DNA of 64,000 nt, from positions 1 through 64,000 of IMG/VR virus record IMGVR_UViG_3300031344_000002. One strand, written 5' to 3'. Position numbers and translations under genes: made by a program. The notes beneath the pieces were generated by a model. That model worked only from the letters and a program-made list of their open reading frames with translations. It had not been told where the DNA came from and did no database searches. This document shows, piece after piece, positions 2,554-13,681 of the stretch; position 1 is the stretch's first letter, and every line of letters begins with the position of its first letter.

Positions 2554-2868
2554 TTATGGATGTCCTTCATCTTTATATATTCCACAAACACAAGGCATAT
2601 CAAATTCAATTTCATTATTTTTCATAACAAAATTAATTGAACTTGTTTTATGATAAGGATTTTTAAGAACTTTTATGTTTTTGTATTTAAACATGACATC
2701 AGTTTCAAATTTAGGATTTTCTAACATTTTTAACCATTCAAATAATTCTGGTGAAGTTACAATTAATTTTAATTCATCTTTATTCTTTTCAAGAAATAAA
2801 TTTAATTTATCAACATTATTTTTATTTCTTTTATAAAATTTTAATTCGTGTATTTGATTATCATTCAT
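2554..2868 (-). CDS. Hypothetical protein
   Basis: ORF directly downstream of the repeat array in the same operon. Confidence 0.65.
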   Translation of the reverse strand: MNDNQIHELKFYKRNKNNVDKLNLFLEKNKDELKLIVTSPELFEWLKMLENPKFETDVMFKYKNIKVLKNPYHKTSSINFVMKNNEIEFDMPCVCGIYKDEGHP

Positions 2869-2901
2869 ATAATTGAATTGTTAATAATATTATTTCTTTT
2901 G

Positions 2902-3269
2902 GGTGTTAAACCCTTCCAATTTAGATTAGTTTCCACCCACCACTAGTTGATATTGTTACAAAACCTTGGTGTTAAACCCTTCCAATTTAGGTTGGTTTCC
3001 ACCCCATTTCAATTCCTGCCTCTACAATTGCACGGTGTTAAACCCTTCCAATTTAGATTAGTTTCCACCATCTTCAATGTTTCCTACCTCATGTTTATTG
3101 GGTGTTAAACCCTTCCAATTTAGATTAGTTTCCACCATAATCACCAATTTTTGAGCTATACAGATGCGGTGTTAAACCCTTCCAATTTAGATTAGTTTCC
3201 ACCCCTGAAGGAGAATATTTGAAGGGATTGGTTGGTGTTAAACCCTTCCAATTTAGATTAGTTTCCACC
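2902..3269 (-). CRISPR. Orphan CRISPR-like array: 6 x 36-bp repeats, 5 unique spacers (30,30,31,31,30 bp)
   Basis: Plus-strand repeat GGTGTTAAACCCTTCCAATTTAGATTAGTTTCCACC starts at 2902, 2968 (2 mismatches), 3034, 3101, 3168 and 3234. Spacers are unrelated to each other. Repeat ends are complementary (GGTG...CACC, AAAC/GTTT). Minus-strand form resembles type VI-B repeats. Confidence 0.85.
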
Positions 3270-3625
3270 CAATCTTGAATGAAATCCCTGATTTGCTCGT
3301 AGTTAAGACCAAATCTTACTTCAAAAATTTGCCAAATAAGTGAATATTTTACCCAAAGTCTGCCATTTTTCCAATCCTGCTGAAATAACCAACAATTATT
3401 ATTAGAATCTGGATGATATAAACCATCTAATTTATAATAAGTTATTTCTTTTTCACCAGTAATTTTAGCTACAGTGTTATTAAACATTTCAAATAAGAAA
3501 TCTGACATTGCTTTAGATTTATCATCCTTATTTACAATGGGTTTAAATTTGATTAATTCAAAAGTAGAATTATCTTTATCAATTTCAAACCCATCAGGTA
3601 CGTTAATCTTTATTTCTTTTTCCAT
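3125..3625 (-). CDS. Hypothetical protein whose C-terminus is encoded by the array repeats
   Basis: N-terminal MEKEIKINVPDGFEIDKDNSTFELIKFK motif, recalled from Bacteroidota phage proteins. VETNLNWKGLTP occurs twice (repeats at 3234 and 3168); stop falls inside the repeat at 3101. Confidence 0.8.
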   Translation of the reverse strand: MEKEIKINVPDGFEIDKDNSTFELIKFKPIVNKDDKSKAMSDFLFEMFNNTVAKITGEKEITYYKLDGLYHPDSNNNCWLFQQDWKNGRLWVKYSLIWQIFEVRFGLNYEQIRDFIQDWVETNLNWKGLTPTNPFKYSPSGVETNLNWKGLTPHLYSSKIGDYGGN

Positions 3626-3707
3626 ATTAATAATTTATTTAAAAGTTAATTTTATTTGTTTTTTATTTTATTATTTCAATTAAACTAAAATAATCGGTTT
3701 TCATAAT

Positions 3708-4085
3708 TTATCTATTATCTCCACTTCCATGTATTGTGCCTTGTTCATATCTTGATTTTAATTTTTCAATATTATATGCAGCAACATCTTCTAATTCAAT
3801 TCCCAGACTATCACACATTGAAGAGATATACCAAAGAACATCTGATAGCTCACTTTTTATTGCTTCTACATGTTCTTGAGTAATTATTCCACCATTATCT
3901 CTAATAATTTTCTTTATTTTACCTTGAACCTCACCTGCTTCACCTAATCCAAGACCATCATAAACAATAGATAATAATATTTTAACATCAATTGGTGTAT
4001 TGGGATGTTTTTCTAAAAATTTATCTAACGATATTTTAAAAAAATTTGCTTTTTTTTGATATTCTTTAAAAGTTGTTATTATCAT
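3708..4085 (-). CDS. mazG: MazG-like nucleotide pyrophosphohydrolase
   Basis: GEAGEVQGKIKKIIRD...ELSDVLWY...NIEKLKSRY...GSGDNR motifs. Confidence 0.9.
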   Translation of the reverse strand: MIITTFKEYQKKANFFKISLDKFLEKHPNTPIDVKILLSIVYDGLGLGEAGEVQGKIKKIIRDNGGIITQEHVEAIKSELSDVLWYISSMCDSLGIELEDVAAYNIEKLKSRYEQGTIHGSGDNR

Positions 4086-11671: not shown

Positions 11672-13681
11672 TTAAATATTAATACCAAAAGTTTTTTCAA
11701 ATTTCATGTTACCACAATCATAAATTTTATATATTTTATTGTCTAAAATGTTTTCACAAATTGATTTATTTTTATCATAATTTTTTAATTTAATAATATT
11801 TCCTTTTCTAAAATTAAAACGATGCTGTCTTAATTTTTCATTTATATTAAAATATGTATATGTTGGTTCATTAACACTAATCAATTGAAATCCTAATTGT
11901 TTATATAAATTACCTTGACTATATCTTCTATCAGCAAAAGATATTATATTTTCGGGTTGATATGTATTTATAAAATATTTTAATAATTTACTTGCACCAC
12001 CAGTTATTTTAGTGTTTAGTTTATTACAAAATCTATTTAAATTATAATAATTTTTATTATTTTCGTGATTACCTAATCCAATTCTCATTTTTTCAAAAGT
12101 CATAATCGACACCAATTCATTATTATAAAATAATCCAATTTTAATATTACTACCAACAAAACCTTGTAAATGATTGTTATTTAAAAAACTATGAATTAAT
12201 TCATTATCATTAATTTCTTTAATTTGACATTTACGAGCAAAGATTTTATTCTCAATAATACCTAATTTAGATTTTATAATACTTTTAATAATTTCTTTTT
12301 TATGTATCCATTCATCTTCAAAAATGTGAAGTAATTGAATTCCTTGTTTTTCACATTCAACTGTTTTATTTAGATGATAATTTTTATCCTTAAATAATTC
12401 TGAATGCCAATATAATCCATTAAATTCGATACCTAATTTATAATCAGGAAGATAAATATCAATTTCTTGTTTATTTTTTAATATTGGTATGTTTTTTATA
12501 ATTGTTTTAATATTTAATTTATTATTAATAAAATCACGAATTTCATTTTCTAATATCGATGCATTTTCAGAAATGGGATTACATTTTGTACAAATATTTT
12601 CATGTTTATTGAAAATAAGTCTTGAATATAATAATGATTTAGAAATTTCAAAATAATTATGAATTTTACAATAATTTTTAATTATAACAAAATGATTATT
12701 AATTTTTATATCGTTTGAATTAATATTAAGTAAATTTGAATATTTTTCTTTAAAATTATCATTGATTACGTTGTGTATTTTATTAATTACATCTATGGAT
12801 TTAGATGGATTATCTACACCATATTTTAGTATGGAAGTTATTTTACTTTTATCTCTATTATTATAATTTTCATCACCATATCTTATTTTTTTTGTATTTT
12901 TTACATCATCTTTATATTCTTGAGTACTACTATATGACGTATGATTATATTTTTTTAAATTTGTTTGTTTTATTTTTTCTTTAACTTTTTCATTTTGAAT
13001 TGAATATTCAACGCCATATTTTTTTAAGTTAGTTTGTTTTGTTTGTTCTTTAATTGTTTCGTTTTGAATTGGATGTTCAACACCATATTTTTTTAAATTA
13101 GTTTGTTTTGCTTTATTATTAATTATTTTATTCTGCATTGGATTTTCAACATTATATCTTTTTAAATTAGTTTGTTTAACTTTTTCTTGTTGAGATTTTA
13201 ATTTAAGATGATGTTCAACACCATATCGTTCTAAATTAGTTTGTTTACTTTTTTCTTTAATACTATCTAATTGTTGTGGATGTTCAACACCATATTTTTT
13301 TAAATTAGTTTGTTTTATTTGTTCTCTTTTTTCTTTAGAAAGTAATGTATATTTAAATCCAAAATTTTTCATTGATGTTTTTTCTCTTTTGATTTTAATA
13401 TTATTGTCTTTTCCAATACATTGCATTGAACAATATTTTGAAAATCCTTCACTAATTTTTTTAAATTTAACTGGTTTACCACATATTACACAAATAGGCG
13501 GTTTGGATAAATCATTTAATATTAAATAAAGCATTGCACCAAATGAAATATTATAGTTTTTAAATTTGTTATAAATTAAAACATATAAATTATAATAATT
13601 TTTTTTAAAAAACGATTCTGTTAATCTTCTTTTAATAATAATATTATCATTTTTTACGATTTCAAGTATTTTTTCCTTCAT
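11672..13681 (-). CDS. Free-standing putative homing endonuclease with KxTNLKKYGV repeats
   Basis: CxxC motifs, about 9 repeats of 23 aa, EIDIYLPDYKLGIEFNGLYWHS nuclease-like core, C-terminal IYDCGNMKF. Confidence 0.75.
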   Translation of the reverse strand: MKEKILEIVKNDNIIIKRRLTESFFKKNYYNLYVLIYNKFKNYNISFGAMLYLILNDLSKPPICVICGKPVKFKKISEGFSKYCSMQCIGKDNNIKIKREKTSMKNFGFKYTLLSKEKREQIKQTNLKKYGVEHPQQLDSIKEKSKQTNLERYGVEHHLKLKSQQEKVKQTNLKRYNVENPMQNKIINNKAKQTNLKKYGVEHPIQNETIKEQTKQTNLKKYGVEYSIQNEKVKEKIKQTNLKKYNHTSYSSTQEYKDDVKNTKKIRYGDENYNNRDKSKITSILKYGVDNPSKSIDVINKIHNVINDNFKEKYSNLLNINSNDIKINNHFVIIKNYCKIHNYFEISKSLLYSRLIFNKHENICTKCNPISENASILENEIRDFINNKLNIKTIIKNIPILKNKQEIDIYLPDYKLGIEFNGLYWHSELFKDKNYHLNKTVECEKQGIQLLHIFEDEWIHKKEIIKSIIKSKLGIIENKIFARKCQIKEINDNELIHSFLNNNHLQGFVGSNIKIGLFYNNELVSIMTFEKMRIGLGNHENNKNYYNLNRFCNKLNTKITGGASKLLKYFINTYQPENIISFADRRYSQGNLYKQLGFQLISVNEPTYTYFNINEKLRQHRFNFRKGNIIKLKNYDKNKSICENILDNKIYKIYDCGNMKFEKTFGINI
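12790..13385 (-). repeat. Coding tandem repeat (about 69-bp unit, K-Q-T-N-L-K-K-Y-G-V)
   Basis: Degenerate in-frame repeats inside 11672..13681; boundaries approximate. Confidence 0.85.

What the first reader, a model, noticed from the sequence alone, without database searches (positions are those of the whole stretch)
3204..3233. Gene-proximal spacer looks like a piece of a host rRNA methyltransferase gene
Seen: the spacer CCTGAAGGAGAATATTTGAAGGGATTGGTT reads PEGEYLKGLV on the plus strand. From memory, this matches the conserved C-terminal motif (HP..IYHPEGEYLKGLVL) of Bacteroidota RlmI-type class I SAM rRNA methyltransferases; this was not verified by search. A minus-strand crRNA would be antisense to that mRNA, which is the polarity needed for RNA targeting. 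Inference: a phage-borne, host-targeting guide, and evidence that the spacers are acquired foreign sequence.
Basis: inference. Interest (0 to 1): 0.7.

Follow-up and report, generated by a model that had tools for sequence, protein, structure and literature searches.

The report
Phage CRISPR spacer copied from host gene
A giant phage from wetland rhizosphere carries CRISPR arrays without cas genes, and the newest spacer of one array is an exact copy of the end of a ribosomal-RNA methyltransferase gene of a bacterium living in the same samples. The phage therefore makes a guide RNA against a gene of its presumed host.

Summary
Confirmed. Window 3204-3233 is the gene-proximal spacer of a real CRISPR array (2902-3269; six 36-nt repeats, five 30-31-nt spacers) on an incompletely assembled jumbo phage (218 kb held, about 66% complete). 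It encodes PEGEYLKGLV. That peptide sits 14 codons before the stop of RlmI-like (PUA + SAM methyltransferase) genes in at least 120 genomes, mostly Bacteroidota. Best reference matches are 29/30 and 28/30. In three rhizosphere metagenomes that hold the phage, a non-phage contig matches all 30 bases and continues as ...PPDHPVSMYHPEGEYLKGLVLYVE-stop. No phage in IMG/VR carries the motif.

The array has no neighbouring cas gene. It is one of three live modules plus one decayed one. In each, the first repeat is fused in frame to the 3' end of a small conserved phage gene, a layout shared by 46 homologues on other phage contigs. Distal repeats decay, and a strain variant lacks the two gene-proximal units of a sister array, so this spacer is probably the newest. 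Transcription with the gene makes the guide antisense to the rlmI-like mRNA.

The effector is unresolved: host Cas13b-like (favoured), a phage Cas12f/TnpB-like nuclease, or something involving the small protein.

The parts
3204..3233 (-). Spacer 5, the finding. It is the gene-proximal, probably newest, spacer. The + strand is the sense strand of an RlmI-like gene (PEGEYLKGLV). The minus-strand transcript is antisense to it.
2902..3269 (-). CRISPR array A: six 36-nt repeats (3234-3269, 3168-3203, 3101-3136, 3034-3069, 2968-3003, 2902-2937) and five spacers. The repeat at 2968-3003 is the two-base variant used by the phage's other two arrays.
3137..3167 (-). Spacer 4 (31 nt), target unknown.
3070..3100 (-). 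Spacer 3 (31 nt), target unknown.
3004..3033 (-). Spacer 2 (30 nt), target unknown.
2938..2967 (-). Spacer 1 (30 nt), the distal and oldest spacer, target unknown.
3234..3269 (-). First repeat. It is read in frame as the last conserved residues (VETNLNWKGLTP) of the upstream small protein.
3270..3625 (-). Small conserved phage gene (118-aa core). The ORF runs on through repeat, spacer 5 and the next repeat to a stop at 3125. It has three paralogues in this genome, each followed by an array, and 46 homologues elsewhere. The fold has no known relative.
2554..2868 (-). Next gene downstream of the array on the same strand. The array lies inside a minus-strand transcription unit.

Best explanation
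The 30-mer is a genuine CRISPR spacer. It sits at the leader end of a cas-less array carried by a jumbo phage, so it is most likely the most recent acquisition. It was copied from codons -14 to -5 of an RlmI-like 23S rRNA methyltransferase gene of a bacterium, most likely Bacteroidota and presumably the host, that lives in the same rhizosphere samples. These points are shown or nearly shown.

The array is transcribed from the minus strand together with the small gene whose last codons are the first repeat. The guide is therefore complementary to the mRNA (inferred from anatomy).

The phage sequence in hand encodes no effector next to any array. As with other viral mini-arrays, I propose that the guides are loaded into an effector supplied in trans. 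My first choice is a host Cas13b-type RNA-guided RNase, and this step is inference. Such an effector processes 36-nt-repeat, 30-nt-spacer arrays without a tracrRNA into spacer-then-repeat crRNAs. Pairing with the rlmI-like transcript would cut it and could trigger collateral RNase activity.

The transcript is probably scarce, so the self-directed guide may simply be tolerated. In that case it is a by-product of spacer uptake inside the host rather than a weapon.

The confidence given is for the whole chain including the Cas13b step. The identity and origin of the spacer alone I hold at about 0.9.
For: Array anatomy. Protospacer: 30/30 in co-occurring non-phage contigs of three runs, continuing as an RlmI-like C-terminus plus stop. 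Motif in at least 120 genomes at the same gene position. No phage source.

Polarity and turnover: degenerate repeats lie at the far end in four sister or related arrays. A strain variant is identical in its flanks but lacks exactly the two gene-proximal units of array C. Spacer GC is foreign to the phage.

Orientation: co-directional genes and the in-frame fusion. The repeat folds at -8.3 kcal/mol on the minus strand against -3.9 on the plus strand.

No cas gene: no Cas13b hit (NF038190) in the 218 kb or in 13 kb upstream, no paired RxxxxH ORF, and no PADLOC hit among the large unknown ORFs. No tracr-like anti-repeat anywhere in the 218 kb.

VI-B likeness: 36-nt repeat, 30-nt spacers, complementary four-base ends and a GAAGGGT box, as in arrays beside a verified Cas13b. 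A T9SS sorting-domain gene points to a Bacteroidota host. A Cas13 target-expression threshold is published (abstract listed, 10.1101/2021.11.23.469693).
Against: No Cas13b was found in the best-matching genomes G001 and G002 or in two Paludibacter-like genomes.

The repeat was not found in 401 Bacteroidaceae genomes (up to 3 mismatches), in a 401-genome Bacteroidota sample, or in JGI metagenome contigs other than phage contigs. Viral mini-arrays normally share their repeat with the host.

The repeat ends are GGUG/CACC, not GUUG/CAAC, and the loop is not poly-U. Ungapped identity to verified or putative Cas13b repeats is only 15-19/36.

A complete relative (G871, 364.7 kb) has the same modules and no Cas13b. 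It does have a Cas12f-like gene whose own array repeat is 24-25/36 identical to that genome's module repeats (23/36 to this window's repeat).

Only one spacer has a known target, so the antisense polarity is a single 50:50 observation. About a third of this phage genome is unseen.
Confidence: 0.4

Rival explanations
1. The arrays serve a phage-encoded miniature type V nuclease (Cas12f/TnpB-like). The guide then directs DNA cleavage of the bacterial chromosome at the rlmI-like gene, for example as part of host takeover. Strand polarity would be irrelevant.
For: The complete relative G871 carries the same small-gene modules and no Cas13b. It has a 482-aa protein that matches the Cas12u3/Cas12f models over their full length (E 3e-82). 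That gene has a six-repeat 36/30 array 223 nt downstream, and the array's repeat is 24-25/36 identical, ungapped and in the same orientation, to G871's own module repeats and 23/36 to this window's repeat (p < 2e-4 against shuffles). Homologues at 61-64% identity on other phage-like contigs also have 36-nt-repeat mini-arrays about 230 nt downstream. This phage has a 412-aa TnpB/Cas12u4-like gene at genome 214,945-216,183. In a Bacteroidaceae sample, both real arrays with GGTG...CACC repeats sit beside TNB-domain proteins.
Against: No such effector lies beside any module array in six loci examined over +-10 kb. This phage's TnpB-like gene has no array beside it and is only 26% identical to G871's. 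No homologue of the G871 protein exists in the 218 kb. 64-69% repeat identity (23-25 of 36) is low for one shared effector. No anti-repeat or tracr-like partner was found. The G871 repeat is itself 22-24/36 identical to Cas13b-type repeats, so repeat likeness does not separate the types. TnpB elements may simply insert near repeats.
Confidence: 0.25
2. The modules are anti-defence devices. The small protein is an anti-CRISPR-like factor, and the array makes crRNA-like RNAs that occupy or reprogram the host effector, as in Racr and viral crlRNA arrays. The rlmI-derived spacer is an accidental, functionless pick-up.
For: Phages are known to carry cas-less repeat units and array-like crlRNA units, often beside anti-CRISPR genes (PMC10651486, 10.1101/2024.10.29.618823, PMC11656645). 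A solitary degenerate repeat fused to a decayed copy of the small gene lies at genome 207,259-207,294. The small protein is phage-restricted and has no known fold. RlmI is not an obvious target for a phage.
Against: Decoys do not need full-length, turning-over spacers. These arrays show polarised unit differences and 13 unique spacers of foreign composition. Known crlRNAs match cas promoters or toxin genes only partially. Here the match is 30/30 to a housekeeping gene. No host effector with this repeat is known.
Confidence: 0.15
3. The small protein and the array form a self-contained phage system. The protein's conserved C-terminus is encoded by the first repeat. It binds or processes the repeat hairpins, and the spacers act as antisense guides that silence host transcripts without any Cas nuclease.
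For: The gene-to-array link is fixed. All 46 homologues end in the repeat-encoded motif at the same in-frame junction, on phages from about 50 kb to 365 kb, with no cas gene nearby. Outside the two loop codons, all four variable repeat positions are third codon positions and all five changes are synonymous. Two of them break predicted RNA pairs, which suggests selection on the peptide. The repeat was found only on phage contigs. The one identified target is antisense-compatible.
Against: 118 aa is very small. No RNA-binding or nuclease fold was recognised (model pLDDT 75.7; best PDB Z 4.8). The 36/30 geometry, the decaying distal repeats and the polarised unit differences are the signature of Cas1-Cas2 integration, which the phage lacks. 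The codon-position signal rests on eight repeat variants (p about 0.01). Spacers often carry in-frame stops, so only the first repeat is reliably translated.
Confidence: 0.12
4. The resemblance to rlmI is coincidental, or the spacer came from a mobile element or another phage that carries an rlmI-like fragment rather than from the host chromosome.
For: Only 30 bases are involved. The contig that bears the protospacer was seen only as 30-letter consensus flanks (loose ends of median 205-255 letters). The best reference genomes lack the repeat, Cas13b and any other spacer match.
Against: A 10-residue exact match to an invariant motif occurs at the same gene position in at least 120 genomes. All 30 bases match, and the flanks continue the same reading frame for ten more codons upstream and four codons plus a stop downstream. 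No viral contig in IMG/VR or INPHARED carries it.
Confidence: 0.03

Closest known systems
Cas-less compact CRISPR arrays of huge phages, some with spacers against host genes (Al-Shayeb et al. 2020, PMC7162821)
   Same: A jumbo phage with short arrays (the median reported there is six repeats). No adaptation or interference genes lie beside them. A spacer matches a bacterium from the same samples, and the targeted gene belongs to the translation apparatus.
   Different: There, phage repeats resemble host repeats. Here the repeat was found only on phages. Each array here is fused in frame to a conserved small gene and duplicated as a module. The effector type is unknown.
Viral CRISPR mini-arrays that use the host's Cas proteins against related viruses (reviewed in PMC11656645)
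   Same: Arrays without cas genes on viruses, with 1-5 spacers. Relatives of this phage carry one- or two-spacer versions.
   Different: Defining features were not met. Repeats identical to a host array were not found, and no spacer matches a related virus. The only identified target is a chromosomal housekeeping gene.
Type VI-B (Cas13b) CRISPR arrays (Smargon et al., 10.1101/092577; verified example in Porphyromonas)
   Same: A 36-nt repeat, 30-nt spacers, four complementary bases at the repeat ends and a GAAGGGT box near the 3' end. No adaptation genes and no tracrRNA are needed. The phylum is Bacteroidota.
   Different: The ends are GGUG/CACC instead of GUUG/CAAC. The loop is not poly-U. 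There is no cas13b in the phage, in a complete relative or in the candidate genomes.
Phage Cas12f/TnpB-like (V-U3-like) loci with 36-nt-repeat arrays, seen here in G871 and its homologues
   Same: The same repeat length and spacer length. The repeat is 23-25/36 identical in the same orientation. These loci lie on phages, and one lies in the same genome as two small-gene modules.
   Different: Those arrays start about 230 nt after the effector gene. The arrays studied here start inside a 118-aa gene of unrelated sequence and have no effector nearby.
RNA anti-CRISPRs (Racr) and viral crRNA-like regulatory RNA arrays (PMC10651486; 10.1101/2024.10.29.618823)
   Same: Phage-borne repeat units or array-like units without cas genes, often next to a small anti-defence protein gene. 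They act through a hijacked host effector and can be aimed at host genes.
   Different: Those RNAs carry no spacer, or short and partly matching ones aimed at cas or toxin promoters. Here the spacers are full length, differ between strains, and one matches a housekeeping gene perfectly.

Membership tests
CRISPR array (generic) | Three or more near-identical direct repeats of 23-55 nt, regularly spaced by unique spacers of similar length | tested here: met
   Six 36-nt repeats (five identical, one with two changes). The spacers are 30, 30, 31, 31 and 30 nt and all unique.
CRISPR array (generic) | Polarity: a degenerate repeat at the leader-distal end, and unit gain or loss at the leader end | tested here: met
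   The distal repeats of array B and of the arrays in L132, L167 and L169 are degenerate. An ENA strain variant lacks exactly the two gene-proximal units of array C. This was not observed for array A itself (one search shows no joints).
CRISPR array (generic) | Spacers derived from foreign nucleic acid | tested here: met
   Spacer 5 matches 30/30 a non-phage contig from the same samples. The mean GC of the 13 spacers is 35.5%, against 26.3% for the genome (p = 3e-4).
CRISPR-Cas locus | cas genes adjacent to the array | tested here: not met
   The neighbours are small phage genes, including MazG. There is no Cas13b, no paired HEPN ORF and no PADLOC hit among the large unknown ORFs. About a third of the genome is unseen.
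Type VI-B (Cas13b) array | 36-nt repeat and 30-nt spacers | tested here: met
   compared.
Type VI-B (Cas13b) array | [quoted passage not shown] | tested here: not met
   The ends pair but are GGUG/CACC. The loop reads CUAAAUU. A two-sided change (U-A to G-C at positions 2 and 35) keeps the terminal pair relative to GUUG-type repeats.
Type VI-B (Cas13b) array | A Cas13b effector in the same genome, or in the host with the same repeat | tested here: not met
   NF038190 finds nothing in G000, G405, the complete relative G871, or G001, G002, G409 and G410. The repeat is absent from about 800 Bacteroidota genomes searched. The true host is not in hand.
Type V-F / V-U (Cas12f, TnpB-like) array | A RuvC/TNB effector next to the array | tested here: not met
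   None lies within 10 kb of any module array. A TnpB-like gene lies 60 kb or more away in this genome.
Type V-F / V-U (Cas12f, TnpB-like) array | A tracrRNA or scaffold with an anti-repeat | tested here: not met
   RNAduplex scans of the whole 218 kb and of the G871 intergenic region give nothing above shuffled controls, apart from the arrays' own opposite strand.
Viral mini-array that exploits host Cas | A repeat identical or near-identical to an array of the host | tested here: inconclusive
   It was not found in the collections searched. The host genome itself is not available.
Viral mini-array that exploits host Cas | Spacers that target related viruses | tested here: not met
   No protospacer was found in INPHARED or IMG/VR for the spacers tried. 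All five spacers of array A were tested against INPHARED; S1-S4 and two relatives' spacers were tested against IMG/VR as exact 26-mers.
RlmI family (the targeted gene) | An N-terminal PUA-like domain plus a class I SAM methyltransferase domain (PF10672) | tested here: met
   L030 protein: PUA_3 E 3e-18 and Methyltrans_SAM E 3e-25.
RlmI family (the targeted gene) | A score above the NCBIfam equivalog cut-off for RlmI (m5C1962) | tested here: not met
   NF011707 scores 293 bits against a cut-off of 712, and a C2499 methyltransferase model scores almost as well. The gene is therefore 'RlmI-like', and its substrate position is unknown.

The most novel reading that the evidence does not exclude
The 118-aa protein is a new CRISPR-associated protein of phages whose conserved C-terminus is literally encoded by the first repeat. 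Together with its array it forms a portable module, found on phages from 50 kb to 365 kb, that turns captured host sequence into antisense guides. The module would work either on its own or as an adaptor that feeds phage guides into an effector. That would be a phage-owned, programmable way of silencing host genes.
Probability: 0.15. Interest if true: 0.85.

Novelty: new variant of a known kind. Interest (0 to 1): 0.62.

Why it matters
Phage-borne arrays aimed at host genes have been proposed from metagenomes, but cases with an exact protospacer in a co-occurring bacterium are few. This is such a case. The target is an rRNA-modification gene, and the spacer sits at the newest position of the array.

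The anatomy around it is potentially more important. A family of phage modules has a CRISPR array that begins inside the last codons of a small conserved gene, carries no cas gene, and uses a repeat seen so far only on phages. If the arrays use a host Cas13b, this would extend viral mini-arrays to RNA-targeting systems. It would also raise the question of how a phage survives a self-activating collateral RNase. If they use a phage Cas12f/TnpB-like nuclease or the small protein, the module is a new compact guide-RNA system.

Either way the module is directly testable. There is a defined guide, a defined 30-nt target, and a short list of candidate effectors.

Tried and rejected
- Rfam on the array region: only sub-threshold noise (CRISPR-DR18, E 7.9).
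- INPHARED BLAST of the whole array: chance-level hits only.
- IMG/VR exact scans: the repeat core finds only this phage. 26-mer cores of spacers 1-4 find only the array itself. Two spacers of related phages give nothing or self.
- JGI metagenome scan with a 20-mer of the repeat: only this phage and one relative.
- Repeat searches in 401 Bacteroidaceae and 401 Bacteroidota genomes: none. The four single one-mismatch hits compare with eight for the reversed control.
- Other spacers against the best-matching genomes: nothing significant. The 29/30 Prevotella match therefore does not identify the host.
- Cas13b (NF038190) in the phage, the upstream 13 kb, a complete relative and seven candidate genomes: none.
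- HEPN motif scan and Pfam, PHROG and PADLOC scans of all ORFs of 600 aa or more: ordinary phage proteins or unknowns, no Cas.
- Walking into the unseen part of the genome by protein look-ups gave only about 21 kb. About 100 kb remains unseen.
- Metatranscriptome contigs: only relatives at 85-95% identity. One 346-nt contig covers a relative of the small gene and stops 16 nt into the first repeat. Contigs carry no strand information.
- Small protein: no Pfam, PHROG or PADLOC family. The AF2 model (pLDDT 75.7) has no PDB relative (Foldseek E > 0.5; VIA Z <= 4.8) and matches only uncharacterised phage proteins in BFVD and the ESM Atlas.
- Typing the repeat by likeness failed. Cas13b-type, Cas12f-like-associated and module repeats all resemble one another.
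- Search for a tracr-like anti-repeat: none.
- PFS/PAM reading from a single protospacer (5' ...TATCAT, 3' TTGTAT...): uninformative.
- Translation of the array as a repeat protein was rejected. Spacers carry in-frame stops, and the 31-nt spacers shift the frame.
Full report
**What is at the coordinates.**
Window 2902-3269 holds six copies of a 36-nt repeat (GGTGTTAAACCCTTCCAATTTAGATTAGTTTCCACC on the + strand; the copy at 2968-3003 differs at two bases). The repeats are separated by five unique spacers of 30, 30, 31, 31 and 30 nt. None of the five spacers has a second copy in the 218-kb genome, even allowing seven mismatches.

**The carrier is a phage.**
The tools class the record as a virus. 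It is JGI contig Ga0265316_10000013: 218,381 bp, 26% GC, CheckV completeness 66%. It encodes a tail sheath, a baseplate wedge, a DnaB-like helicase, a family B DNA polymerase and similar proteins. ENA assemblies of the same phage give contigs of 276.5 and 70.3 kb that abut. The true genome is therefore about 330-350 kb, and roughly 100 kb was not available to me. The phage occurs in six rhizosphere metagenomes, and relatives occur in peat and permafrost runs. A gene with a type IX secretion sorting domain points to a Bacteroidota host.

**The rlmI claim.**
Almost all hits are Bacteroidota, and a minority are Comamonadaceae and others.
- In nearly every case the motif lies 14 codons before the stop of a ~400-aa protein ending ...DHP.N.YHPEGEYLKGLVLYVE.
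- One such protein has PUA_3 and Methyltrans_SAM domains. Its best NCBIfam model is RlmI, below the equivalog cut-off, so I call the family RlmI-like.
- Nucleotide identity to the spacer ranges from 20 to 29 of 30. The best are Prevotella sp. UBA11202 (29/30) and a roe-deer rumen Bacteroidaceae MAG (28/30).
- From the position-wise frequencies, I estimate the chance of 29/30 or better, given the peptide, at 2.5e-4 to 1e-3 per genome. These matches are therefore suggestive but cannot name the host.
- Those genomes contain neither the repeat, nor Cas13b, nor a match to any other spacer.

**The decisive result.**
I laid the contigs of four rhizosphere DNA runs that hold the phage on window 2600-3800. 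In three of them (X1, X2, X5) a contig lies on exactly 3204-3233 with no differing letter listed. It continues on both sides with sequence unlike the phage. Joined, the 90 bases read PPDHPVSMYHPEGEYLKGLVLYVE followed by a stop, which is an RlmI-like C-terminus. The protospacer therefore exists, base for base, in a bacterium that shares the samples with the phage. None of the 120 reference loci is closer than 62/75 to that sequence, so the species is not in hand. No comparable loose-ended contig was seen for spacers 1-4. The degenerate pattern finds no viral contig other than this phage's own array, and the INPHARED search of the whole array returned no match to this spacer, so the 'better match to a phage' refutation fails.

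**Surroundings: the modules.**
- The genome has two more arrays with the two-base repeat variant, at 153,690-154,055 (six repeats) and 155,107-155,340 (four repeats). A solitary degenerate repeat lies at 207,259-207,294.
- Each array begins immediately after the codons ...IQDW of a paralogous small gene. In the window this gene is 3625->3270 on the minus strand.
- The reading frame continues through the first repeat as VETNLNWKGLTP, then into the first spacer until a stop.
- The solitary repeat follows a remnant of the same gene.
- A protein search found 46 homologues of 121-167 aa, on contigs from under 1 kb to 365 kb. All end in the repeat-encoded motif at the same junction, and many run on through a 10-codon spacer into a second copy of the motif.
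- DNA of six such loci confirmed arrays of 2-8 repeats with 30-nt spacers and related repeats. No cas-like gene lies within 10 kb.

**Repeat evolution and the small protein.**
Across eight repeat variants, the four variable positions outside the two loop codons are all third codon positions, and all five changes are synonymous. Two of these changes break predicted RNA pairs. This hints that the peptide, and not only the RNA, is under selection. The sample is small (p about 0.01). The protein has no family in Pfam, PHROGs or PADLOC. Its AF2 model (pLDDT 75.7) resembles only uncharacterised phage proteins.

**Polarity and turnover.**
The last repeat, on the side away from the small gene, is degenerate in array B and in the arrays of L132, L167 and L169. 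An ENA contig from another sample is identical to the genome on both flanks of array C but lacks exactly 132 nt, the two gene-proximal repeat-spacer units. The repeat is far shorter than the assembler's k of 141, so this is not repeat collapse. The gene side therefore behaves as the leader end, and spacer 3204-3233 sits at the newest position of array A. The 13 spacers average 35.5% GC against 26.3% for the genome (p = 3e-4), so they are compositionally foreign.

All neighbouring genes, the in-frame fusion and the better fold of the repeat on that strand (-8.3 against -3.9 kcal/mol) indicate transcription from the minus strand. Only one spacer has an identified target. Because the host genome is absent from the references, only a spacer from a very conserved segment could have been recognised. 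The other spacers may or may not be host-derived.

**Which effector? Evidence bearing on Cas13b.**
No Cas13b (NF038190) match exists in the 218 kb or in the IMG/VR record G405, which holds the 13 kb upstream of the window; the further ~8 kb beyond the contig's far end was seen only as a gene list with Pfam families, none Cas-like. No ORF of 300 aa or more has an R[NHQ]xxxH HEPN motif, and none of the ten large ORFs re-checked with the looser RxxxxH pattern has a pair. To have a verified comparison, I located 36/30 arrays in Porphyromonas genomes. One lies beside a protein that matches the Cas13b equivalog model at E 3e-226. Those repeats share several features with ours:
- the 36-nt length;
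- four-base complementary ends;
- a GAAGGGT box near the 3' end.

Gapped identity is 25/36, about 2.4 SD above core-shuffled controls. The published VI-B features are met for lengths but not literally for the GUUG/CAAC ends or the poly-U loop.

**Evidence bearing on a type V effector.**
- The related megaphage G871 (364,702 bp, terminal repeats, 100% complete) carries two small-gene modules and has no Cas13b.
- G871 does encode a 482-aa protein that matches the Cas12u3/Cas12f models over their full length. A six-repeat 36/30 array lies 223 nt downstream of it.
- That array's repeat is 24-25/36 identical, ungapped and in the same orientation, to G871's own module repeats and 21-24/36 to those of the other phages (23/36 to this window's). 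It is also 22-24/36 identical to the Cas13b-type repeats.
- Its homologues at 61-64% identity on other phage-like contigs have similar mini-arrays about 230 nt downstream.
- Both real GGTG...CACC arrays found in a Bacteroidaceae sample sit beside TNB-domain proteins.
- This phage has a 412-aa TnpB/Cas12u4-like gene. It has no array beside it and is only 26% identical to G871's.
- No tracr-like anti-repeat exists in the 218 kb.

Repeat likeness therefore cannot separate type VI-B from these small type V systems. They may look alike because all depend on the same kind of 36/30 integrase. Trans-acquisition by VI-B arrays is reported in the literature (cited).

**Verdict on mechanism.**
Shown:
- a real, dynamic, phage-borne CRISPR array;
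- its leader-proximal spacer copied from an RlmI-like gene of a co-occurring bacterium.

Inferred: minus-strand guides antisense to the mRNA.

Open: the effector. My ranking is as follows.
1. A host Cas13b-type enzyme acting in trans (about 0.4).
2. A phage Cas12f/TnpB-like nuclease cutting host DNA (0.25).
3. An anti-defence decoy or reprogramming module with the small protein as partner (0.15).
4. A self-contained small-protein system (0.12).

If Cas13b is the user, a guide against a host transcript should trigger collateral RNase activity. A published expression threshold for Cas13 self-targeting (abstract) offers a way for a guide against a scarce transcript to be tolerated. In that case the spacer may be a by-product of uptake in the host rather than a weapon.

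**Comparison with what is known.**
Huge phages with compact cas-less arrays and host-directed spacers have been described. So have viral mini-arrays, RNA anti-CRISPRs and viral crRNA-like arrays paired with anti-CRISPR proteins. The spacer finding is a clean new member of that kind. I did not find the fixed in-frame fusion of the first repeat to a conserved small gene described in the papers I read. The same holds for its spread as a module over many phages and for a repeat family seen only on phages. I rate the whole as a new variant of a known kind.

Noticed in passing
Genome (outside the window) G000 153,690-154,055 and 155,107-155,340; L001 3338-5345: Two further arrays (six and four repeats, eight spacers) lie 1 kb apart on the other strand. 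Each is fused to its own paralogue of the small gene. Their repeat is the two-base variant that also appears once inside the window's array (2968-3003), which suggests exchange between arrays.
   Followed up: yes
G000 207,200-207,340 (L002 3200-3341): A decayed module. The first ~14 codons of the small gene (MENETKTNIPDGFE...) are joined directly to a solitary degenerate repeat. It looks like the 'single repeat unit' of RNA anti-CRISPRs.
   Followed up: partly
G000 214,945-216,183 (L143 14945-16183): A 412-aa TnpB-like protein (HTH_OrfB_IS605, OrfB_IS605, Cas12f1-like TNB; PADLOC Cas12u4 E 2e-69) with no array or obvious guide region beside it. It is 38% identical to a truncated homologue that sits next to a GGTG...CACC array in a Bacteroidaceae genome (L180).
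   Followed up: partly
G871 (IMGVR_UViG_3300044712_001937) 217,417-219,452; L185 5418-7452: A complete 364.7-kb phage carries a Cas12f/Cas12u3-like gene with a six-repeat 36/30 array 223 nt downstream. The array's repeat (GTTGTAAACAACCACAAATTGAAAGGTACTTACAAC) is as similar to Cas13b-type repeats (22-24/36) as to the module repeats. A degenerate repeat tail (TTTACAAC) lies just upstream of the first repeat.
   Followed up: partly
L179 (G150:C42 34,890-37,546) and L180 (G054:C103 6,494-7,899): Bacteroidaceae chromosomal arrays with 36-nt GGTG...CACC repeats lie directly beside TNB-domain proteins (671 aa and a V-U4-like protein). These may be uncharacterised small type V systems. The L179 repeat has an 11-bp perfect terminal stem.
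   Followed up: partly
L187 versus L188 and L189 (contigs carrying P0054): The same Cas12f-like gene with identical upstream genes occurs with and without its downstream one-spacer mini-array in different samples.
   Followed up: no
L030 2578-2612 against window 3199-3232: In the 28/30 reference genome the five bases before the protospacer (CCACC) equal the end of the repeat, so BLAST extends the match to 33/34. In the true protospacer contig the flank is ATCAT, so this is probably coincidence.
   Followed up: partly
L155 4612-7182 (13 kb upstream of the window start, same phage): A UvrD-like helicase gene is interrupted by an intein with a LAGLIDADG homing endonuclease. Nearby are DUF7487 paralogues, one of which is also in the window at 11672-13681.
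   Followed up: no
G000 81,657-88,610: A 2,317-aa ORF contains a poly(A) polymerase / CCA-adding enzyme head domain and an RNA-binding domain in its C-terminal third. The rest has no known domain.
   Followed up: no
G000 217,700-218,381 (contig end): About 55 tandem copies of a 12-nt unit run to the end of the record, inside a gene that continues in the ENA contig. This explains why the assembly breaks there.
   Followed up: no
window 3254-3595: A peat metatranscriptome (run X22) holds a 346-nt contig about 87% identical to the small gene that ends 16 nt into the first repeat. This suggests that relatives of the module are present in RNA libraries. DNA carry-over cannot be excluded.
   Followed up: partly
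window 3708-4085; L157 7078-7764: A MazG-like pyrophosphohydrolase lies just upstream of the module. Tad4-family and T4 Y16D-like genes lie near the TnpB-like gene. In the related phage L169 the same Tad4 / Y16D neighbourhood leads into an eight-repeat module instead.
   Followed up: no
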